Positions 1,147 to 56,000 of a stretch of 64,000 nt of DNA are shown one piece after another; position 1 is the first letter of the stretch, and every line of letters begins with the position of its first letter. The notes beneath the pieces are model-generated. The model did not search any database. It saw only the letters and a program-made list of their open reading frames with translations, and was not told the origin of the DNA. Location of the stretch: the NCBI GenBank assembly GCA_965637545.1, contig OZ281495.1:21080001-21144000 (forward strand). The letters are read 5' to 3'. Position numbers and translations under genes: made by a program. Source of the stretch: Phallusia mammillata. Taxonomy: Eukaryota.

Positions 1147-4100
1147 TCAAACTATTTCATATTTTTCCACAAGAAGTGCTGTTTCGGTGGAGTATTTCAC
1201 AGGGGACCCATCACCAGCCATTTCAACATCCACTACCTAAAATGCATTTTGTGTTTAAGTAAGCTTTTACACAACATGTAACCAAAAATAAACACCAAGA
1301 AAATGAATACCTGCAGGTCTGTGTATGATCTTTTAGTAGCATGGAATGAAACATTAATTGGAAAGAAATCGTCAGGGGAACCAGCAATGCTAAATTCCAT
1401 TACACCAGAGCTGTTGTTTGCATCAATCACTGGCAACGACCTGTTTTACATAAATTTTACACATTATTTAAAATAATTACAATAACACTGCAGAACAATA
1501 AAGTTACAAACCATTCTAGAATGTTTTTCCTAGAGTCATGTTTGAAGTCTCCATCTACATCAGCTACATTGGGAGCGCCTACGCCAGATGGAACTGGGAT
1601 GCTAATTGTCACATCAATCAATTCCAACTCTTCTAACTGAAGCTCATATTCAATGTTTACATCGCAGCCACCATCAGCATTCTCATTAGGCCAGCAGTTA
1701 ACTACAAAAAGATACACCACAAATTAAAATAATAAAAGGATAATCAACATAAAGCTATAGTGATCCAGCATTTCCCAAATTTTCTACTGGCAATTCTTAT
1801 ACAGAATTATACAGCTTTCATGTACCACTTTTATGTGAAAACTTACGATAACTGAAATTCATTAACGATAGTTTTAGTGACACAGTAAATCAATTAAGCC
1901 ACACAATCTATGCTTGCACAACAGAAAAATAGTACAGGGTACTTGTAAGGGGCAGAAGACTTTCATCAGTTGTTTGCAATCTCCATTTCAGAACACCAAC
2001 ATCCTGTTTGAGTGGAAAAGGTTTGTCTGGACTCTTCAGACCAACAATGCCTTTTGCTTGAAATATTTTCTTGTCAACATTAGGATGGGTCTATGTATGA
2101 AAAAAAATAATAACTGTTTAAAGTGGTTCATTGTATGATTGTGTCTTTAATTTATGATTGATTTACCCGACCTTTCCTAAACATTGATCTGAAACTGATT
2201 TTTCATTTGTATAAATTCAATGCCCAGGGTTTTACAATCAACCATTTAAAAACTCTGTGCACAGTAAAAAAGTTAAAAACTTGATAACCTCCCTTTGGTT
2301 TTAGAAATCAAACTATATGCACATAACTAAACAATGTGTTTAATTTATATTTGTTTACAAATATTCCCCTTGAATTGACATTTGTTTTATAAATTCCCTG
2401 TTAACTTCCCTATTATGAATTCCCTATTAACAAGTTTATTGATATTAGTAACTAACCTGTACTTGGCAACCTCTGTTGTCATTGTTTTCTACTTTCATTC
2501 GAATGCAACCAAACTGGCCATCAGATATTCGTAGCAAGCACATGCCACCAAGAAGCATGTTTTGTAATCCACCATCTCTTCCAGCAGTCACACTTAACTT
2601 TTCCTCAACTCGGATGTGCACACTACAATTGTTTTAGAGGTTTAAATGTTTGGTCACAACATGTTCAGCAAGAATGCAGGTTAAACAACTACCTTTCAGT
2701 GAGAGGTACCGAAGTCTTCGCAACATCTGATTTTTTGGACTTCATATTTCCAGAACGCACTTGCTCACCCTCAGAAATAAGTTTATCCACAAATGAATCA
2801 ACATCCTTCGATTTTGCACCAAGTTTCATAGCTTTGCCATGTGACCTTTAACATTTAAAAACCAAAAAATATAGATTTGTTTGCATCCTTGCTGTATAAA
2901 ACAAGCCATACCTTGTTGGGATAGACTTTTTCTTTGCAGGCTCTGGTGCCAAAGTTTGAGTTGGTAAGTCAGATTTCATTCCATCCATACCAGCACCGAA
3001 TCCTCTGCTGCTGCCTACAAACATACAACAAAGGCACTGAATGTTTTTGGAGCTTGTCAGTCATATTCTTAAATGTAGGTAAAACATAAACATACCTGCA
3101 GTTTAAAATAATAGAGTAAACTAAAGTTGCATGCAATTCATACCTCCCATTCTAACATTGCCTCTCATCGCATCACGTCGCATCTGCTGTAGTTCTTTTG
3201 CTTTTCTTCGCATCGTAGCCTTGGTTTCATCCTCCTGGCTCTGTAAAAGTCAACAAAAGTTTGTTGTTGCAAGAATTTTGATTTGTGGGTTACGAAATAA
3301 ACGATACTGCATGTCAACTATTTTGACCAGTATATTTTTACTATTAAAAAAAAATATACATTTCAACTTCCTCGCAAGCTTTAAGCTAGCGAGTCAAAAA
3401 CGAGCTATTTTGATAAACAACTATTGCAAAGTTTGCACAAATTATGTTGCAATCACTACAAGTCATGAGTTAGATCAAGACTTCTTGACATTTTACCCCA
3501 ACGCTCACTTTTACTTGATTATTATTAAATCACAATTTTCCACCTATAAACATCATTAAATACTAGGGTTGGGCATTTGACCGGTCAAATAAAATCTGGT
3601 CAATTGATCGGTCAAATACTTGTCAAATAGGTCAAATATCGGTCAAATACTATTCACATTATTAAATTGCACTTTTAGTTTAAAGTTGAAGTTAAATCTT
3701 CTTCTAAACCATAAGTAGTGGAAATGGAGGTTTCAACTCATATAAATTTGTTTTGAAATGGGAAATGTTCAGTTTATATTATATTACAGACTACTCCGAC
3801 TGCATTGCGTGCTTCATTTCATCAATGGCCCCACCTGTGTGCCTGTAATTTTCATTCAGTAATCACATTTGTGAACTGGATTCTCATTATATTCTATATA
3901 CATCATATTAAAGTCTAATTTTGACTGAGATTTAACTGTAAAACTCGCTTATCCTACTTAAAGTCGTAATTTATGCTGTTATCACATCTCCATTCATGAC
4001 AAAAAAGGAATATACAAAAGCTTGATATGTACGTACTTTATCCCAATAAGTACTGACCTGTAACTTATCCAAAAAAATCTATTCAGGGCAACTATAAGCT

Positions 4101-7017
4101 AATAGCTACAAACAATTTTTGGATCAACTATAGAAAAAAAGGACTGTAGACCTACAAGTTTACACAGATGCTATAAATAACTTAGATTTTTTGATCTGTC
4201 AATAAAAATGTGCAACATTTACAAAAAATATCCAAGTAAACACTAATGAACTAACTTTCCCCCACGGACATATCACACTCGATTTTTATTAAAATAAAAC
4301 GGTTTTTATTAAATAAACTAGAAGTGATCCATGTTTTTTAATTGCATTGTAAACCTTGCAAAGTTTGCCATGACGTAAATCAGATCATAATTTCAAATCA
4401 AAATTATCTCCTAATTGTTTTGTTATTTATTTTAAATGAACAAAACACATCTATATTGGCTTTGAAAGCACTTATTAATACAAAAGTATGTCCTAAACTG
4501 TTCTATCTGAGGGTTATTAGAAATAATTTACCCTTTCCAACAACCAAAAAGCAAGTACAAACAAATTTAACACATTTGATTTTTAAAATTAAAAATAGTA
4601 TTTGACCGGTTAAATAAAGTGCTGTCAATTGACCGTATTTGACCGGTCAATTGACCGGCTTGCCAACCCTATTAAATACATTGTAAAACTTAATTTATAC
4701 TGCCCACCTAAATTTACACAATTTGCAAGAGTGGGCGATACCGCCCAAAATCAGAAGCACTGTAACATATCTAAATTTTTAGACAAACAAAATTATTTGC
4801 CGTATACATATAATGCTAAATAAAAGAAATATATAAAATACTTGGGGGTAATACGGTGGAAAATGGGTAAATCCAACAAAAACTAACAAAATGATTTTCA
4901 ACACTTTGCAATGTACAAACAAACAAGGCATATATAAAACTTCTGAGTCATGTACTTTCACAAGTACAGTTATTTTAACTTTACGGGGTTATGTGATTAT
5001 GTCTAAGAAACTCGTGTTAGAAAGAAGAAAACAATAGAGAATTTTTTTTCAAACCTTGCGAACTGCTTTGAAAACTTTTTCCTCATGGGAGTCCATTTCA
5101 GTAAATGTTCTTATTTGGGCAAGGTTCACACTTTCCCGGTACCCCAATGCAACAACTTCATCAAACGCAAAAATCAACTCAAATGCATGATCCTGAATGT
5201 CTGTTTCATCTATTACTCTACAATACTCAGGAATCTAAAAAAAACATTATGTTTAATCTATGCCACTGTTTTCTTTTACGATGTTACTATTAGTGATGGG
5301 ACGATACCAGGTTTTGAAGCGAGTACCGATACTGAGTACGAGTACCACATGTATATACCTTCGATATCGAGTACTTAAGTACATTGTTGTATATCACTGG
5401 CTAATTTATCTACCATGGTCGGGGTACAGGCGCACACATGCACATGCAGAAAAATGTGGTCTCCACACGATAGGGAAAAAAATATACGTAACCGGGTTGA
5501 ACTTTTTCCCGATTTTGTGCTGTCCGAAGCAAATATTGGTATAAAGTTGGCTGTATTCTAATGTTGTAAACTGACCTTCGGTATTCGCACGTTGGTATCG
5601 AAAACTGAGACAAAATATTTCAATACCGAGTACGAGTATCGATACCACTGAAATTGGTCGATACCATCGATACAGAGTACCAAGTACCCATCCCATCACT
5701 AGTTACTATACATGTCTACAACAATCTTTGGGCAGATATTTGTATGTATTAGTCTACTTACTACTCTTGAAAATAGTCTCAAAGTTTCAAGGTCTTCCAA
5801 AATGTTGCTATTTTTGGTAGTAATTAATACCATGTACATTTTTTCAAGGGGTTGGTAAACATAACGCACAGATTCTGTTTCAACAAATGTGTGTTGTTTT
5901 CCTGCAAAAGCAATAAAAAAACCACTGAATGATTGGCAACAGGGCAGAAAAAAAAAGTAGAGCATGTTTCATTATTAATTAAAGTACAAATTTTGTACCT
6001 GTGTTCATTAATTTGGGAAAAGCTGCCAGCAATCCTTCAATGCGGGAGCGAGTCATTTCAACAAACTGACGAGAAATTATGGCCCTTCCATTTTTTGTAC
6101 ACACAGCAGCTGCGAGCAAAACCTGCAAAAATGTTGAATATTACTATGCTCAATTATAACTTGTTGCTTAAGTTATTCAGTTTCATTCAAAACATAAATA
6201 TTTCAAAATTTCATACCATGACAAAAAGTTTGTAGTGTATTAGTCAGTCCAAAGTTCAAGATTTGTACCTAAATTGTTTTGTAAGACGAGATGTACACCT
6301 GGTAAAATAAAAAATATATACAGGAATAACCATAATCAATGTACCTGATTGATTGTTAAGCAATATTATATGGTATATATTAACGCTTAAATACTACTCA
6401 ACTCACATCTTACCTCAAAGTCGCGGTGGCCAAACTGAGGAGAAACAATATTTTTTTTAATCCTGTACGACAGTGTACTTTTAAATTGACGTGGATTTGG
6501 CAAAATAAACACTAAAGCAAAGAAAAACAGTTTGTACTACTCAACTGCAGCAGGATTCGTAATTTTTGACACAGAAAACTTTTAAAATAACCAAATACAC
6601 AGCAAAATTTGAAAGTAAATTATTAAAGATATTGGCGAGGAATGGATAAAAAAATACACCTGAAGTACATGCGACAGCCACGTCAGAAGCATATCGTTGC
6701 GAACTTTACGCAAGGAACTGATTATTTTTGTTACAACAGCAAGCACAAACGTTAAGTATTCAAAAGTTGGTAACTTTTGTCTGTGTTTTTGGCCAGCTGG
6801 GGAGCAATCATCGTTTAAAGTGAAGGATAATAAACTAAATCGAGTCACGTTTTGTTGCAAATCTTCCGAGGCCCGTAAATTTCATAGTTAGGAGCTTCTG
6901 GTGCCAACTTGCCCAAATGCAATTTTATTCGTTAAGATAAAGTTTATCAGGCCGTTATGTTTTATTTTCTGACCTACGGTCGGTGCATGGTTGAAGTATA
7001 ACAAACTAGCTTACCAT
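1147..7017 (-). CDS. ARCN1: Coatomer subunit delta (delta-COP), 12 coding exons, 507 aa
   Basis: Hand-spliced GT-AG exons 7015-7017 (ATG only), 5999-6122, 5762-5901, 5055-5234, 3144-3240, 2912-3014, 2693-2845, 2457-2622, 1943-2090, 1512-1701, 1311-1440, 1147-1236 give 1524 nt in frame. Translation: [39 protein letters not shown]...[16 protein letters not shown]...[35 protein letters not shown]...[16 protein letters not shown], typical of delta-COP. Confidence 0.97.
3564..4671. mobile_element. Non-autonomous hAT element (MITE), 1108 bp, in delta-COP intron
   Basis: Terminal inverted repeats TAGGGTTGG(G)CA / TGCCAACCCTA; perfect 8-bp TSD TTAAATAC (3556-3563, 4672-4679); many subterminal TTGACCGGTCAA-like motifs at both ends; no ORF. 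Confidence 0.9.
5291..5701. mobile_element. hAT MITE, 411 bp, in delta-COP intron
   Basis: TIR TAGTGATGGGA / TCCCATCACTA; perfect 8-bp TSD GTTACTAT (5283-5290, 5702-5709); subterminal GAGTAC/GATAC repeats. Confidence 0.9.
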
Positions 7018-50078: not shown

Positions 50079-53000
50079 CTATACCAGACAATTTTGATTT
50101 GAATTCGATTGTACTGAATTTTCATGGGACGTACTAGGACTGTTCCTAGTGTTCAGCAAACATGTTTGTTCATCATCTTCTGTAAAAATTAGTAAAAAAC
50201 AAATTGAAATAAGTTAAATTCTGGTTAAGGTCATCAACAATGTAGAAAACGAACTATATTCATAATCCGAACATTAGAGCTAAAAACATGGGCTTATGCT
50301 CGCCATTCCTTACCAAGTGTGTTGCAAGCACGTTGATCGTAAAACATCCGAGTTTCAAGAAGTCTCTGTCTTTGTGCTTGAATAACAAGGCTTTGTGATA
50401 CGTCGGGAATGATTACGTCTACGATGACTTTCAGCCCAAAAACTACGTGCTATCAATCACAAGAAAAAAATTAACAACATAAAAAAGGCTTATAATTAGT
50501 ACAGAATTGGTTTCATATGGCAATTAGTTTTTGTTGAAGCAGAATTAAAATGTGTTTTTTTTGTATGACTTGGAGGCCTTTCGAGTTACTGGCTTTTTTC
50601 AAATGCTTCACTGGTCAAACCAACTATGATCATAATTTTTGCACATGTGCATTGATCAGCTATTTTAAGACACTTGTGCTTCTCCAAAACCAATTGATCG
50701 TCACACGCACCAAAAGGTACTGTTAGATTTTGGTTTCCGATATGGCTGCATACTTTCCAATTCTCTTAAATGCAACTCTTTTACCTTGAAGGATTAGACC
50801 CTGTGTTACAGACAGGTTGAAAAACGTAATAAAATATAACAGTATCGGTCTTGAAAACGATGTCAAATTTAAGTTTTTAATTGCATCCGAGAGCTCACCT
50901 CAAAAACAAACATGAAAATAAATATCCCAGCATACACATGCCAATGATTCACGTCGTGTCCTGTGTGGTGAATGGAATCGTTGGGATCTACATTTTCATA
51001 CCTATAACATTCATAAAATTACATTATTAACATGTGTATACAATGTGTAGGTTTTCATACAAAACCGTAAACGTAGCCTTGAAGTCCAAGTTATTTTGCA
51101 AACGTGTTGTCTCATTATATGACCTACCAACAGGTTGAAGGCACGCCAGCAGCTGAGGAGTTGTATGGTGGGCGTTTGTCAATTAGTTCCACTGAAATAT
51201 TGGATAGGGTGCTCATAACGTAGCCCTCGAAACAACTGCAAAAATAGCAAACTTTATATCGTTGTTTACACACAGTTCATACCTTAGTATTCACCGAAGT
51301 GATTGCAGCATAAATTGGGGGGAAATACACACCATATAGTTTAATAAAAGCCTATAGTCGTTCTTGGCTACAAAGTATTGACGTTCAGCATTATAGGACC
51401 TTAGACGGTGGAAAATCTCATTCTTGTACTCCACCAACCGGGCCAAATGAGTGGGCTCGTTTACAACAGCGAGGGTTTAAACTTTAAATCATATTGCGGT
51501 AGGCTAAAATTTTAGGACCCAACCCCTTACCAATTCTATAACATAAATCAGAGTTGCAAGCGGGCCCGAAATCTGAACCCGAACCCGGCCCGAACCCGGC
51601 CCGAACCCGGCCCGAACCCGAAAGTATAAGCCCGAAGCCCGGCCCGAACCCGAAACGTTTTTGAAAAGCCCGTTTAGGCCCGAAATTTTGATTGACAGGC
51701 TTATCCACGAAAGCCTTGCGACAAAGTATGAGAAAGAAAAACAGAGAAAAGATAACAAACACAATGAACAATAGTAGACAATGGGGTAAACAATACGTTT
51801 TAGAGTAGGGTGGGCATTAGGTCAAAGCCAGAGAATTGTTACTAAAAAATGGCGGAAACGGAACGTAAAGTCAGGCCCGTTTTGCGCCCGTTTTCTGACA
51901 AATACCTAAGCCCGAACCCGGCCCGAACCCGAACCCGGCCCGAAAAACCCGGCCCGACTTGCAACTCTGACATGAATAAAATAAATTCTATGACATGAAA
52001 CAAATCGATTCCACTAACTTGTCAGAACGGTTTGGATTTATTGCACAAGGGCTGTAAAGTGCAATGTAGACCATCTTCTGTATGAAGTTAGATGTGATGC
52101 CGATGAGGAGACCGTTAGTTAACACTGCCACAATACTGATACCCTCTAGTATTGAGAACCACATTCCTACAAAAAATAATAAGTTAGTGATCAATCTATA
52201 CAACTAAATTTTATACGCAATATATTATCATGAAAATAAACATAGACATTAAAGAGGCTCACATGCGGAATACCGTGTGCTGTGAGGTAACGTTTACTAT
52301 TTAAAATGTGATTGAAAGTTTGGCGGTCACGGTGTACAAACAGACATAAAATCTTACCAATGTCCTTGCTGCGATCAGGTACAACTCGTCGATACTGGGT
52401 CACAAACTTGTAGGCGTCTAATCTGATCTCAATAACGTTGTTGAGCAAAGCAAAAAGTGGGCCAAGTGGGAAAGCAGTAACAAACAACGTTACAAAGCCA
52501 AACTGTATAACTGCAAAAGACGTAATGTGTTTGATATTGCCCCGTATTATATTAACCTACACCAAGATCAATATTGCTGCAATTAGTGACCTGTAATGCA
52601 ATCATTCGATGCCATGCGGTATGAGTTTTGTAATATATCCAATATTAGTGCATAATTCATGCCGAAGACTGATTCAAATTGGTTTACATAAGCTGCTGAC
52701 ATTTTTAACAAATTCGATTCAACTTGCCCATTTCAAGATATTCCGAGAAAAGTCCAAGTTCTTCAAATGGTTCCAACGAATAATCGCGAAATGTTGCTTG
52801 ATCGAGCAGCTTGTCCGACAGTTCGTCCTGTGAATTTTTTTGTGGTGATTCTGTTGAGTGTGAATAATGATAAGGTTAACGTTACATAGGAATAAATCAC
52901 AGTACGCCAGGCCCATTGAAGGCGCTATACCGAATCAGCCGGTCACCAAGCATTCACCACCATATGGCAAGGCGTAGGCTAGAAAAATCTAGCCTGCGGT

Positions 53001-56000
53001 GGGATTCGAACCCACGACAGGAGTCTTTCCGGGACTCGCGCTCTACCAACTGAGCTACACAGGCCCAGTGGAGAATCCGCCGAAAGTCGAATCACAAGCA
53101 CCGTTGCCTGCCTCGTATGCTGCACATGTCAGCTTCGTAGTAGGGGATCGCCAGATTGACCAGTATCAGTTAAGATGAACATAAATTCATAACTGGGATC
53201 AGCCCTGAAGCGTCTATGCAGACCAGCGATCACGGCACACTCATATATAAATCACAGTACGCCAGGCCCATTGAAGGCGCTTGTGATTCGACTTTCGGCG
53301 GATTCTCCACTGGGCCTGTGTAGCTCAGTTGGTAGTTCGGCGGATTCTCCACCGCAGGCTAGATTTTTCTAGCCTACGCCTTGCCATATGGTGGTGAATG
53401 CTTGGTGACCGGCTGATTCGGTATAGCGCCTTCAATGGGCCTGGCGTACTGTGATTTACATATGAGTGTGCCGTGATCGCTGGTCTGCATAGACGCTTCA
53501 GGGCTGATCCCAGTTATGAATTTATGTTCATCTTACATAGGAATAGGACTATAGTAAACAGGAGGTACAATGTGTCGTTGTAAGGTAACGTTATTTTTAG
53601 TATTTAATGTTATTCACGTTTTTCTGGAACTGTTTTGATTCCAAATACCTTTAATCCTTTTCTCCAAATCCTTTTTAAGTTTCATCGATTTTCTCTTTTT
53701 CCACCAGTTTGACAACACTCTGTGCAAACAATTCTATTTAGCCTCAAAATAGTGCACATTCAGGTCTAAAACTAGCAAATATCGCTTACGGAAAGAGTAT
53801 TTCTTTGATGTTGTTTAGTGCTTGCTTCAATACCATCACTAATCCAAGATTAATACAAACTTCGATCAAGCAACCAGCTGGATCACACTGAAAATACGGA
53901 TAGCGGTTTAACCCTTACAAATTCTATTCACCTTGTAGACAAAACGATTTCAAAGCCAAAAAACATCAAGTAGCTGCATGACTATGTTATGTGTTAAAAC
54001 CATGGTACTCTTGGTAATTGTTTAGAATCTGTTTAGGATTGTAAAAAATAAGTTTTTGAAATTTTACTGTATATACGGTCTAACTCTAACCTGTTCCTGG
54101 CGAAAACCTCCAATGCGGTTGTAGCTAAATGGTGTTCCAACAACCCTACCGCGGAAAAAAGCGGCATAAAAAGTAGAAGAATAATAGTTAACTGCTTGAA
54201 ACAGAAACATCTTAAGAGTGTAAGAATCCTCAAACTCATCCTGTGTTCGTGGAGCCTCTGCAACGTCACATATTTACAACAACATAAAGTCAAAAGGTCA
54301 GTCTTCATTAATGCAACCAACTTACCCATGTTGGTGAGTTTGATGGCCAGTTTCTGATATAACTTAAAAAAATCAAATATATGTTTGATATTGAATTGGA
54401 AGTTTGTTAAAGCAACCAAGCATCTACATTTTCAAGTTAATGGCTAGAACACATATGATATAATTATTTTGTTGATAATAATAATTACACGTATCGCCTG
54501 TAAACACAACTTTGGTCTATATAACTTATGTGTATATCTGCTCATAAGAAAAGTTATGACTGTAAATCATATACCACATCCATAATGGTAATGATGATAA
54601 AGTTAATGAAAGAGGCCGAGACCGAGATAAGAAGGCGGGAGTTTTGTCGCAGAAATACATCAGGTGTGCTGTAGTAAGCTACTTCAGTGAGAATTGTTCT
54701 GTATAGAATCACACCGAAAAGAGCAGCCAGTACCAGGAGTAACTGTGAAAAATAGCATTAAATATATCAAAGTTGTCGAAGTTTAAAACCATAAATTTTA
54801 CGACTGTTTGAGTAGCCTATATAACTTTTATGTATCTTTTTGTTATTTTCGAAACGCTTACCATGAACAAAAACGTTGTACATGATGCAGCGATTCTTTT
54901 TCCTTTGAGGTTAGATGACAAATATGGTTCTTGCTTTCCAGTCACCGGATTCAACTTTTGCTTGTTGGCCACAGTTTCAAATTCTGGTCGGACCAGGCCC
55001 TAAATAAGTCACAAGTCACTTACTAAACTTAGGAATGACAACAAATGATAACTTAAATTACACAATTTGTACCTCTTGCCGGTTGATGTCATTCGTATCC
55101 CACTTGTACGCCAGTTCTGCACGCCTTCGCTTCCAAAATTCCAGGAAAAATGTTGCTACACAATTTACAACAAGAGTTTGGTTTGTGAAAATGGTGTTAG
55201 GCAATAAATATCACCCACACAAGCAACATATCAATTTTATTGCGATCATAGGGCTATTGTCCTAAATTTAATACTTTTCTTTTATTGCAAGGTTCAAAAA
55301 ATAGGTTTAAAATGAACACAAACAGCAACGGTTAACGATTTACAAAACTGCTGGAAGTGTGTGTTGTTAAGATAAAGGTATCTCCTACACCCGGCACAGA
55401 CCCGATTGAAAGTTGCTGAAATTACAACACAAATAAGCCATAATGTGCGAATTAACACCTGAATCAAGTTCAGTTTATTTACACTCAAACCCAAACTTGA
55501 ATTCAACCCGCAGACCGCGCGAATTACAACAAAATGCAGTAACAGTCATGGGTTACCTACCCCATATCGCCATGATAAAGGAATAGATCACAGTGAACGT
55601 GTTGTCAAACACGTAGGTCACTTGACTGTACAGACACGAGTGGTTGAGTGGGACAAAAGTGCAGGTGTCGCAAAGCGGACAAATCTCCAAATTCGAACTG
55701 CAAACCTGTTGCCTGTATAAAAAGTTGGTTTGTGTATAAAAACGTTTTCGCAATTAATAACTTAAACACTTTACCAACACGACAGAACTTTTGTTCAAAA
55801 TACGTGAGGTAAAACGAGTGCGCCAAACTGAAAATATCGTGTTTCATTTCGCCTAAGTTTTCATGTTTTACCCAACTTACTGTATTTCGTCGCTCGCAAC
55901 AGTGCCGAGGCCGTACAAGAATGCAAGAACACCAAGGATCGCCGCAGGTATCAACATTTCTGTATAAAATCCCAACCAAGCAAAGTAAACTCCAATTTTC

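What the first reader, a model, noticed from the sequence alone, without database searches (positions are those of the whole stretch)
52882..53545. Young tRNA-cassette element with circularly permuted unit and nested fold-back arms
Order: A(52893-52925) B tRNA-like(52991-53064) C(53043-53097) D E(53171-53246) A(53248-53280), then inverted C'(53281-53335), a 16-nt template-switch duplication TTCGGCGGATTCTCCA replacing the tRNA core, and B'A'E'(53352-53535). A recurs at a 355-bp period and the inverted copy reads E-A-B, so the unit behaves as a circle or tandem monomer entered at different points. The tRNA-like part is internal, has intact Pol III A/B boxes and an immediate TTTTT terminator in a small hairpin (AGGCTAG-ATTTTT-CTAGCCT), and its upstream flank is copied with it. 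An ordinary SINE made by reverse transcription of the Pol III transcript would not copy that flank. This points to a DNA-level (rolling-circle, recombinase or fold-back) mobile element carrying a Pol III gene with an altered anticodon arm. The near-identical arms (about 108, 110 and 55 bp) would form long, mutually exclusive dsRNA stems about 65 nt from an anoctamin splice acceptor. Best DNA-level candidate for an undescribed element.
Basis: partly seen in the sequence, partly recalled or inferred. Interest (0 to 1): 0.75.

Follow-up and report, generated by a model that had tools for sequence, protein, structure and literature searches.

The report
Penelope-style tRNA-carrying retroposon, fold-back copy
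This is one very young copy of an abundant 355-base non-coding jumping element of a sea-squirt genome; it carries a tRNA-like gene, and its tandem, inverted and permuted layout is the known insertion scar of Penelope-like retrotransposons, not a sign of a DNA-level circle or fold-back transposon.

Summary
Window 52893-53535 carries a 355-bp unit with an intact tRNA-like gene, a 355-bp direct period and perfect 110/111/60-nt inverted arms. A 13-bp target-site duplication (TTACATAGGAATA) flanks the whole structure.

The DNA-level interpretation does not hold. The family has thousands of near-identical copies. In 41 independent insertions:
- The outer ends sit at two fixed sites (unit ~355 and ~77-84), and the inner ends are variable 5' truncations.
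- 24 insertions are fold-backs.
- All 19 clean fold-backs pair one end of each type, so the ~80-nt "tail" sits on one side only.
- Multi-unit arrays lie inside a single 8-15-bp, AT-rich duplication.

This is the published footprint of Penelope-like elements (PLEs), whose enzyme nicks and extends both strands from two internal RNA sites. Active PLEs are abundant in this genome. One family shows an 83-nt tail and a 14-bp duplication.

The element has no hammerhead ribozyme, so it is a tRNA-bearing, ribozyme-free variant of animal non-LTR retrozymes. No helper was identified by sequence, and no RNA data could be obtained. Circle versus tandem template stays open.

Earlier agents of this scan reached the same reading on other copies of this family. 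I rate it a new variant of a known kind, of moderate interest.

The parts
52882..52894 (.). Left copy of the 13-bp target-site duplication TTACATAGGAATA. Its last 2 nt are ambiguous with the element end.
52893..53281 (-). Arm 1, tRNA-sense on the minus strand. Its outer end is at RT start site A (unit 355 = window 52893). It holds one full 355-nt unit (52893-53247) and then 34 nt of the next unit (unit 355-322, window 53248-53281). It has no tail.
   Evidence: 100% identity to the unit
52991..53064 (-). Intact tRNA-like gene (unit 184-257). A box at 53057-53046, B box at 53012-53002. The anticodon loop CCGGAAA has C at position 33.
   Evidence: Rfam RF00005, 55.3 bits, E 7e-11; ARAGORN
52976..52995 (-). 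Hairpin AGGCTAG-ATTTTT-CTAGCCT (read on the minus strand). The T5 Pol III terminator (52983-52987) starts 3 nt after the tRNA 3' end.
   Evidence: True tRNA genes of this genome show short T runs (T3-T4) just after the gene.
53276..53281 (.). Inner junction of the two arms, with the 6-nt microhomology GGCGCT.
   Evidence: the two alignments overlap
53276..53335 (+). Arm 2, innermost piece: unit 146-205. This is the flank upstream of the tRNA plus the first 22 nt of the tRNA, including the A box.
53336..53352 (+). 17-nt re-copy of unit 164-180 (TTCGGCGGATTCTCCAC) standing where unit 206-245 (the tRNA core) should be. It joins the next piece through the 4-nt microhomology CCAC. Best read as two reverse-transcriptase template switches.
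53349..53458 (+). Arm 2, unit 246-355: the tRNA 3' end, the T5 hairpin (T5 at 53364-53368) and the 3' body.
   Evidence: 100% identity
53459..53459 (+). Unit position 1, the hypervariable junction base. It is C here and T in arm 1 (complement at 53247).
   Evidence: T49 C8 A3 G1 over 61 junctions, against a 1.3% background
53460..53535 (+). Tail: unit 2-77, ending at RT start site B. It is present on this side of the insertion only.
53533..53545 (.). Right copy of the target-site duplication TTACATAGGAATA. Its first 3 nt are ambiguous with the tail end.
52729..52827 (-). Probable downstream anoctamin exon (...FSEYLEM). Its acceptor AG is at 52828-52829, 64 nt from the element.
   Evidence: Read from the sequence. 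This 33-aa piece gave no Pfam match on its own. Neighbouring minus-strand ORFs match PF04547.

Best explanation
Window 52893-53535 is a single, very recent insertion of a non-autonomous retroposon with a 355-nt unit. An RNA in tRNA-sense was copied into an AT-rich target by an enzyme of the Penelope-like (PLE) type.

Inferred steps:
1. The endonuclease makes staggered nicks on both strands, which gives the 13-bp duplication.
2. Each 3'-OH primes cDNA synthesis at one of two fixed internal sites of the RNA. Site A is at unit 355 (...GTGATTTA). Site B lies about 80 nt downstream (...CATCTTAAC).
3. Both cDNAs run towards the RNA 5' side across the unit boundary, so the template was longer than one unit or circular.
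4. Each cDNA stops at an arbitrary point. In the right arm the enzyme switched template twice.
5. The two cDNAs are joined through microhomology.

The product is two inverted arms, a 355-bp direct period, apparent circular permutation, and a tail on one side only.

The internal tRNA-like gene, with its own T5 terminator, is cargo or a cis module. It may act in Pol III/TFIIIC binding or in RNase P/Z processing. It is not the promoter of the transposition template.

Shown here: the anatomy, the family statistics, and the presence of active PLEs in this genome. Inferred: the identity of the enzyme, the form of the template, and the role of the tRNA.
For: Family census of 41 independent insertions:
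- 60 of 67 3'-type outer ends fall at unit 348-355 (34) or unit 73-88 (26).
- 5' ends are spread over the whole unit.
- 24 of 41 insertions are fold-backs.
- All 19 fold-backs with both ends at preferred sites pair A with B, never A+A or B+B. About 2e-6 is expected if each end chose independently with equal odds.
- Arrays of up to 3-4 units lie inside one duplication. L018 is 1131 bp with a 13-bp TSD; L006 is 968 bp with a 14-bp TSD.
- 28 of 41 have a TSD of at least 8 bp. Mean length is 12 bp and GC is 25%, against 38-40% background.
- Inner junctions show 0-6 nt of microhomology or 3-24 nt of filler.

Agreement with the literature:
- PLE insertions are 5'-truncated partial tandems, often with an adjacent inverted 5'-truncated copy, and with a tail often at one end only (PMC8557442).
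- A purified PLE protein nicks and extends both strands. It starts reverse transcription at two adjacent internal RNA sites, and the tail is the sequence between them. It prefers AT-rich targets and is predicted to be a dimer (PMC11167929).

PLEs in this genome:
- 434 GIY-YIG candidates.
- One family has a 973-aa ORF with RVT_1 plus a C-terminal GIY-YIG domain. Its copies are 98.6-99.8% identical. It has a 159-bp pseudo-LTR with a hammerhead core, two 3' ends 83 nt apart, and a 14-bp TSD.
- The tail of that family aligns in register with the element's tail (z = 3.15, p = 0.0035). A control using the 100 nt upstream gives z = 0.
Against: - No helper was identified by sequence. blastn and nhmmer of the unit against 48 PLE loci found nothing significant. 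The in-register tail similarity is weak and rests on the one PLE family I could delimit.
- The tail is about 80 nt, not the 30-40 nt quoted for PLEs, although the local 973-aa PLE family also has an 83-nt tail.
- The element lacks the hammerhead ribozyme typical of PLE pseudo-LTRs and retrozymes.
- How an RNA longer than one unit is made across a T5 Pol III terminator is unexplained.
- The 41 insertions were picked from the best-scoring, youngest copies, not from a full census.
Confidence: 0.8

Rival explanations
1. This is an ordinary LINE-mobilised SINE. A multimeric SINE RNA was inserted by a non-LTR (LINE) reverse transcriptase, and the inversion arose by L1-style twin priming.
For: Variable TSDs, 5' truncation, inverted 5' parts and microhomology junctions also occur with LINE target-primed reverse transcription. 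No PLE helper was identified by sequence.
Against: In twin priming, the second primer anneals at arbitrary internal positions. Here 19 of 24 fold-backs have both outer ends at the two fixed sites, and always one of each. From what is established for LINE-dependent SINEs, tandem multi-unit insertions inside one TSD and a one-sided tail are not their features. There is no A-tail or microsatellite tail. The fold-back frequency of 59% is far above what I recall for short LINE-dependent elements.
Confidence: 0.1
2. The template is a unit-length circular RNA, as in retrozymes, copied by rolling-circle reverse transcription, rather than a transcript of a tandem genomic array. This concerns the form of the template only and is compatible with a PLE-type enzyme.
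For: - Every arm that starts at site B crosses the 355|1 boundary, and arms reach 3-4 units.
- Units of one insertion usually share private variants, for example L018 145T, L024 156G and L030 268G.
- The unit folds into a rod that closes its ends, with a modest z of -2.1.
- The base at the boundary (position 1) varies in 20% of junctions, and varies within insertions. An error-prone passage over a ligation site would produce this.
Against: - Genomic tandem arrays exist and could be transcribed as multimers, as is proposed for PLEs (PMC11167929).
- No self-cleaving ribozyme is present.
- RNase P/Z cuts would fall at unit 183|184 and 257|258, not at 355|1.
- Some arrays have units that differ: L006, L028, L062.
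- The fold z-score is the same on the antisense strand.
- No RNA evidence was obtainable.
Confidence: 0.2
3. This is a DNA-level element: a Helitron-like rolling circle, re-integrated eccDNA, a recombinase cassette or a fold-back/MITE transposon carrying a Pol III gene.
For: The layout is permuted with a 355-bp period, and the inverted arms are near-perfect.
Against:
- The arms are unequal, and their inner ends differ in every copy.
- The outer ends are one-sided 3'-type ends with 5' truncation.
- There are no conserved terminal inverted repeats, because the two outer ends (A and B) are different sequences.
Confidence: 0.02
4. The arrangement is an assembly artefact, with repeat copies collapsed or chimerically joined.
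For: Published work notes that PLE tandem/inverted structures trouble short-read assemblies (PMC8557442).
Against: The same architecture recurs at 24 loci, each with its own junction and its own matching TSD. The window copy has a perfect 13-bp TSD and unique flanks.
Confidence: 0.02

Closest known systems
Penelope-like elements (canonical EN+ PLEs), and their non-autonomous derivatives such as MRC1 of Chlamydomonas
   Same: - 5' truncation.
- Head-to-tail partial tandems inside one insertion (pseudo-LTR logic).
- An adjacent inverted 5'-truncated copy.
- A tail on one side only.
- Two fixed reverse-transcription start sites.
- AT-rich targets and variable TSDs.
- Autonomous PLEs in the same genome show the same 83-nt tail and a 14-bp TSD.
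   Different: The element has no ORF. No significant sequence similarity to any sampled PLE was found. It carries a complete tRNA-like Pol III gene. It has no hammerhead.
Animal non-LTR retrozymes: tandem 150-450-bp repeats with a type I hammerhead, proposed to be non-autonomous PLE derivatives (PMC7229834; bioRxiv 10.64898/2026.07.22.740005)
   Same: Short non-coding unit of about 355 bp. Tandem copies. TSDs longer than 4 bp. Likely dependence on PLE enzymes.
   Different: There is no hammerhead or other Rfam ribozyme, and a tRNA-like gene stands in the unit instead. GC is 52%, against the under-50% reported for retrozymes. Circular RNA is not shown.
Canonical tRNA-derived SINEs
   Same: tRNA-like module with intact A and B boxes. 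Non-coding, abundant and retroposed.
   Different: The tRNA is internal (unit 184-257), and the sequence upstream of it is copied as well. A T5 terminator follows the tRNA at once. There is no LINE-type tail. Insertions are multi-unit and fold-back.
Small-RNA-gene-bearing non-autonomous LTR elements (Cassandra, Helenus, Ajax; PMC10886601, title and abstract only)
   Same: A small-RNA gene is carried as a module inside a non-autonomous retroelement of a class other than LINE-dependent SINEs.
   Different: Those are LTR elements. This one has the PLE-type anatomy.

Membership tests
PLE-type (Penelope-like) insertion / non-autonomous PLE | Fixed 3' ends with variable 5' truncation | tested here: met
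   60 of 67 3'-type outer ends fall at unit 348-355 or 73-88. The 72 5' ends are spread over the unit.
PLE-type (Penelope-like) insertion / non-autonomous PLE | Partial head-to-tail tandems formed within one insertion (pseudo-LTR) | tested here: met
   Multi-unit arrays lie inside a single TSD, for example L018, L006 and L015. The window's arm 1 is 1.1 units long.
PLE-type (Penelope-like) insertion / non-autonomous PLE | Inverted 5'-truncated copy adjacent at the 5' side | tested here: met
   24 of 41 insertions, including the window copy.
PLE-type (Penelope-like) insertion / non-autonomous PLE | Tail extension between two RT start sites, present at one end only | tested here: met
   19 of 19 clean fold-backs pair A with B. 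The tail is about 77-84 nt, longer than the published 30-40 nt, but a local PLE family has an 83-nt tail.
PLE-type (Penelope-like) insertion / non-autonomous PLE | AT-rich target with a variable-length TSD | tested here: met
   TSDs of 8-15 bp in 28 of 41, with GC 25% against 38-40% background.
PLE-type (Penelope-like) insertion / non-autonomous PLE | Sequence shared with an autonomous PLE (3' end, pseudo-LTR or tail) | tested here: inconclusive
   blastn and nhmmer found nothing across 48 PLE loci. The only signal is a weak in-register tail similarity to the 973-aa family, p = 0.0035.
PLE-type (Penelope-like) insertion / non-autonomous PLE | Mobilisation by a PLE RT/GIY-YIG protein | not testable with these tools
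   Needs a biochemical or genetic assay. Candidate helpers exist: 434 GIY-YIG candidates and an intact 973-aa RVT_1+GIY-YIG ORF.
Non-LTR retrozyme | Type I hammerhead ribozyme in each unit | tested here: not met
   An Rfam scan at E<=1 of 52500-53900, both strands and covering the unit junctions, found only tRNA. No CUGAUGA core is visible by eye.
Non-LTR retrozyme | Expression as a unit-length circular RNA | not testable with these tools
Canonical tRNA-derived SINE | tRNA-like head at the 5' end, driving a transcript that spans the element up to a LINE-type or A-rich tail | tested here: not met
   The tRNA sits at unit 184-257, and the upstream sequence is copied too. T5 lies 3 nt after the tRNA. 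There is no A-tail.
Helitron / rolling-circle DNA transposon | No TSD, insertion between A and T, 5'-TC...CTRR-3' ends with a 3' hairpin (features as I recall them) | tested here: not met
   TSDs of 8-15 bp. The ends are GTGATTTA and CATCTTAAC.
Fold-back / TIR (MITE) DNA transposon | Constant terminal inverted repeats and a TSD of fixed length (features as I recall them) | tested here: not met
   The two outer ends are different sequences (A and B). Arm lengths and inner junctions differ in every copy, and TSD length varies.

The most novel reading that the evidence does not exclude
The tRNA-like gene may be the functional stand-in for the hammerhead of retrozymes and PLE pseudo-LTRs. On this reading, host RNase P/Z or TFIIIC acts on it to shape or license the template. 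The enzyme, bound as a dimer over the ~80-nt tail, starts one cDNA at each side of the tail. It then re-copies a unit-length RNA, circular or with its ends held together, across an error-prone 355|1 junction.

If so, this family would be a natural, compact (355-nt) substrate. It would expose the cis rules of PLE reverse transcription and a ribozyme-free route to concatemeric cDNA.
Probability: 0.15. Interest if true: 0.7.

Novelty: new variant of a known kind. Interest (0 to 1): 0.42.

Why it matters
PLE retrotransposition is poorly understood, and PLE-type enzymes are being studied in vitro (PMC11167929). This family offers thousands of near-identical, very young insertions of a 355-nt template.
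- It shows in vivo that both target strands are extended.
- It shows that the two start sites are used in strict pairs, one of each per insertion. That points to a single complex spanning the tail.
- It shows that a small-RNA gene can ride in a PLE-dependent element in place of a hammerhead. This widens the definition of both SINEs and retrozymes.

For annotation, such copies are easily mistaken for MITEs, fold-back elements or satellites.

Locally, the insertion puts perfect 110-nt inverted repeats 64 nt upstream of an anoctamin splice acceptor. That could affect splicing or draw RNA editing. This was not tested.

Tried and rejected
- **RNA evidence.** Nothing can be said about expression, RNA ends or circles.
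- **Helper by sequence.** I compared the unit, and the tail with its flanks, against 30 GIY-YIG loci, an 8-kb full PLE copy and 18 further PLE 3' regions, using blastn (word size 7) and nhmmer --max. The only hits were chance or tRNA T-arm matches.
- **Internal duplication.** A possible duplication between the sequences upstream of sites A and B was not significant (p = 0.08).
- **RNA 5' ends at the tRNA.** 5' ends pile up only mildly at the tRNA 3' end: 8 observed against 3 expected, p = 0.011 on a window chosen after the fact. There is no pile-up at the tRNA 5' end, and none at unit position 1 (3 of 72). This gives no good support for RNase P/Z-cut or unit-length linear templates.
- **Rod-like fold.** z = -2.1 on both strands, so not discriminating.
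- **Spliced leader.** No spliced-leader sequence sits at the element's 5' ends. One insertion (L079) merely landed in a leader-like target.
- **Empty-site allele.** None found elsewhere in the assembly.
- **Literature.** Six literature searches returned no paper describing a tRNA-bearing PLE-dependent element, and nothing on Cics-1 of Ciona.
- **Arms from different RNAs.** Only 3 fold-backs differ between arms at subfamily marker sites. That is too few to conclude anything.
- **Limits.** N-masked stretches next to L016 and L030 were left alone, and those copies were excluded.

Full report
**Observation**

- A 35-nt block recurs at a 355-bp period (52892-52926 and 53247-53281, 100% identical).
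- Three inverted pairs of 110, 111 and 60 nt are 98-100% complementary.
- A 17-mer, TTCGGCGGATTCTCCAC, is repeated 42 bp apart and stands where a tRNA core should be.
- On the minus strand at 52991-53064 lies a structurally intact tRNA-like gene. Rfam scores it at 55.3 bits, as high as the true tRNA genes of this genome, which score 46-58 bits. ARAGORN also calls it. Its A and B boxes are intact, and its anticodon loop is aberrant (C at position 33).
- A T5 run lies 3 nt after the tRNA's 3' end, in the loop of a small hairpin.

The host gene is an anoctamin on the minus strand (PF04547). The element edge lies 64 nt upstream of the acceptor AG at 52828-52829. Both flanks are unique in the assembly.

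**The family**

The genome is 240 Mb with eight large contigs. An earlier scan note calls it a sea squirt, and I found the 16-nt ascidian spliced leader in two loci. It holds thousands of copies: 5187 first-look candidates for the whole query and 2546 for an 86-nt piece, with at least 40 perfect 86-nt matches.

I defined the unit in tRNA-sense as the reverse complement of window 52893-53247.
- Position 1 begins TATATGAGTG.
- The tRNA occupies 184-257.
- The T5 occupies 261-265.
- Position 355 ends ...GTGATTTA.

I mapped this unit on 30 top-scoring loci, and on 19 loci chosen only because they hold the 86-nt 3' piece. After removing segmental duplicates and copies next to masked N runs, 41 independent insertions remained.

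**What the copies show**

- *Outer ends.* Of the 67 outer ends that are 3'-type, 34 lie at unit 348-355 (site A) and 26 at unit 73-88 (site B). Only 7 lie elsewhere.
- *Inner or 5' ends.* These are scattered over the whole unit (72 ends).
- *Duplications.* 28 of 41 insertions have a flanking duplication of 8-15 bp. The mean is 12 bp and GC is 25%, against 38-40% background.
- *Arrays.* Arrays of up to 3-4 units lie inside a single duplication. Examples are L018 (1131 bp, 13-bp TSD) and L006 (968 bp, 14-bp TSD).
- *Fold-backs.* 24 of 41 are fold-backs, with two arms in opposite orientation meeting at their truncated 5' ends. The junctions show 0-6 nt of microhomology or 3-24 nt of filler.
- *Pairing.* In all 19 fold-backs whose two outer ends lie at preferred sites, one end is A and the other is B. 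None is A+A or B+B. So the ~80-nt stretch between the sites, the tail, is present on one side only.

These are marks of target-primed reverse transcription of a tRNA-sense RNA. They are not marks of a DNA-level transposon.

**The window copy**

The window copy is a typical member.
- Arm 1 (52893-53281, minus sense) starts at site A and runs 1.1 units.
- Arm 2 (53276-53535, plus sense) starts at site B. It copies the tail and unit 355-246, jumps to re-copy 180-164 (microhomology CCAC), then jumps to 205-146.
- Arm 2 meets arm 1 through the microhomology GGCGCT.

Apart from the junction base, the arms are identical over 280 nt. The insertion is therefore very recent.

**Comparison with what is known**

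The set of scars is the published anatomy of Penelope-like elements. Insertions are 5'-truncated and form partial tandems (pseudo-LTRs). An inverted 5'-truncated copy often lies next to the 5' end. A short tail is often present at only one end (PMC8557442; PMC8969392).

A purified PLE protein nicks and extends both target strands. It starts reverse transcription at two adjacent internal sites of the RNA, with no homology to the target. It prefers AT-rich DNA and is predicted to be a dimer. The tail is the sequence between the two start sites (PMC11167929).

PLEs are abundant here: 434 GIY-YIG candidates, many with open frames of 700-970 aa. I delimited one family.
- Its copies are 98.6-99.8% identical.
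- It has a 159-bp pseudo-LTR carrying a hammerhead core.
- It has two alternative 3' ends 83 nt apart.
- One copy has a 14-bp duplication.

So the tail length and duplication size of the short element match a PLE of the same genome.

An in-register alignment of the two tails with their flanks scores above shuffles (z = 3.15, p = 0.0035). The 100 nt upstream do not (z = 0). This is suggestive only. blastn and nhmmer found no significant similarity between the unit and any of 48 PLE loci, so the helper is not identified.

**Where it differs**

Animal non-LTR retrozymes are the closest described non-autonomous relatives. They are tandem units of 150-450 bp with TSDs longer than 4 bp, proposed to derive from PLE pseudo-LTRs (PMC7229834; bioRxiv 10.64898/2026.07.22.740005). 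They are defined by a type I hammerhead in each unit.

This unit has none. No other Rfam ribozyme matches at E<=1 on either strand, unit junctions included. It carries a complete, self-terminated tRNA-like gene instead.

It is also not a canonical SINE. The tRNA is internal, its upstream flank is copied, and a Pol III transcript would end at the T5 before reaching either start site. True tRNA genes of this genome show short T runs (T3-T4) just after the gene.

The six literature searches returned no paper describing a tRNA-bearing PLE-dependent element.

**Open points**

*Form of the template.* Arms that start at site B always cross the 355|1 boundary, and arms can span several units. The template is therefore a multimer or a circle.
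- Units of one insertion mostly share private variants. This fits either form.
- Some arrays are heterogeneous: L006, L028, L062.
- 5' ends do not pile up at position 1 (3 of 72). This argues against unit-length linear RNAs joined by end-to-end jumps.

*The junction base.* The base right after site A (unit position 1) is hypervariable: T49, C8, A3, G1 over 61 junctions, against a 1.3% background. Position 3 also varies (6 of 61). Nine of the 16 insertions with two or more junctions are heterogeneous there. In the window copy it is T in arm 1 and C in arm 2. I cannot explain this. Candidates are an error-prone passage of the enzyme at its own start site or over a ligation junction, or repeated endonuclease nicking of this AT-rich motif in resident copies.

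*Transcription.* How transcription gets past the T5, and what the tRNA module does, are not known.

*RNA data.* None could be obtained.

**Verdict**

The DNA-level interpretation is rejected. The permuted or tandem-monomer idea survives, but at the RNA level.

The thing is a fold-back insertion of a PLE-type, ribozyme-free, tRNA-bearing non-autonomous retroposon. I rate it a new variant of a known kind.

Earlier agents of this scan reached the same Penelope-style reading on other copies of this family. I reached it independently, before reading those notes. New here:
- the strict A+B pairing statistic;
- the hypervariable junction base;
- the matched 83-nt tail and 14-bp duplication of a resident PLE family, with the weak in-register tail similarity;
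- the base-by-base anatomy of this copy.

Noticed in passing
L061 (G000:C3:16092000-16100000), ORF 1808-4726; copies L039-L044, L050: A young autonomous Penelope-like family. It has a 973-aa ORF (RVT_1 plus C-terminal GIY-YIG), and its copies are 98.6-99.8% identical. Its 159-bp pseudo-LTR (1645-1803 = 4910-5068) carries a hammerhead core, CTGATGA...CGAAA. It has two alternative 3' ends 83 nt apart, and this copy has the 14-bp TSD ATATACGGAAATGA. A tandem repeat with a period of about 61 bp follows at 5700-6770.
   Followed up: partly
L079 (G000:C2:29288600-29290100), about 643-979: One insertion of the element landed in a genomic copy of the 16-nt ascidian spliced-leader sequence ATTCTATTTGAATAAG. 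Its 14-bp TSD is 14 of those 16 nt. L046 holds another genomic copy of the leader.
   Followed up: no
G000:C3, about 4.1-5.07 Mb (L008, L009, L065-L069): At least seven copies of the same insertion have identical flanks. The surrounding region has been segmentally duplicated several times since the insertion.
   Followed up: no
L062 (G000:C4:27430000-27437000), 2016-3577 and 4191-4310: This is the longest array seen, about 4.4 units with an inverted arm. It is older: two adjacent units share a 5-nt deletion at the tRNA 3' end. It lies about 600 bp from a GIY-YIG fragment on the opposite strand, 3' end to 3' end. These are probably independent neighbouring insertions.
   Followed up: partly
L036 (G000:C4:7520110-7523211), 2326-3099: A cluster of true tRNA genes (Leu-TAG, Met-CAT, Leu-AAG and a fragment) sits next to PLE copies. 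Their 3' flanks show only short T runs (T3-T4) close to the gene.
   Followed up: no
window 52729-52827 (minus strand): The anoctamin exon downstream of the insertion appears to end ...GAAATGG followed by GCAAGT. That would be a GC-AG intron rather than GT-AG. I read this by eye and did not check it against RNA.
   Followed up: no
unit positions 183 and 322-323 (window 53065, 52926-52925): Positions 183 (G/A, 27 of 57) and 322 (A/G) are two-state markers, usually uniform within an insertion, so several source subfamilies are active. Position 183 is the base just before the tRNA 5' end.
   Followed up: partly
L016 and L030: Runs of N (masked or gaps) abut copies of the element. I left them untouched and excluded those copies from the counts.
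   Followed up: no
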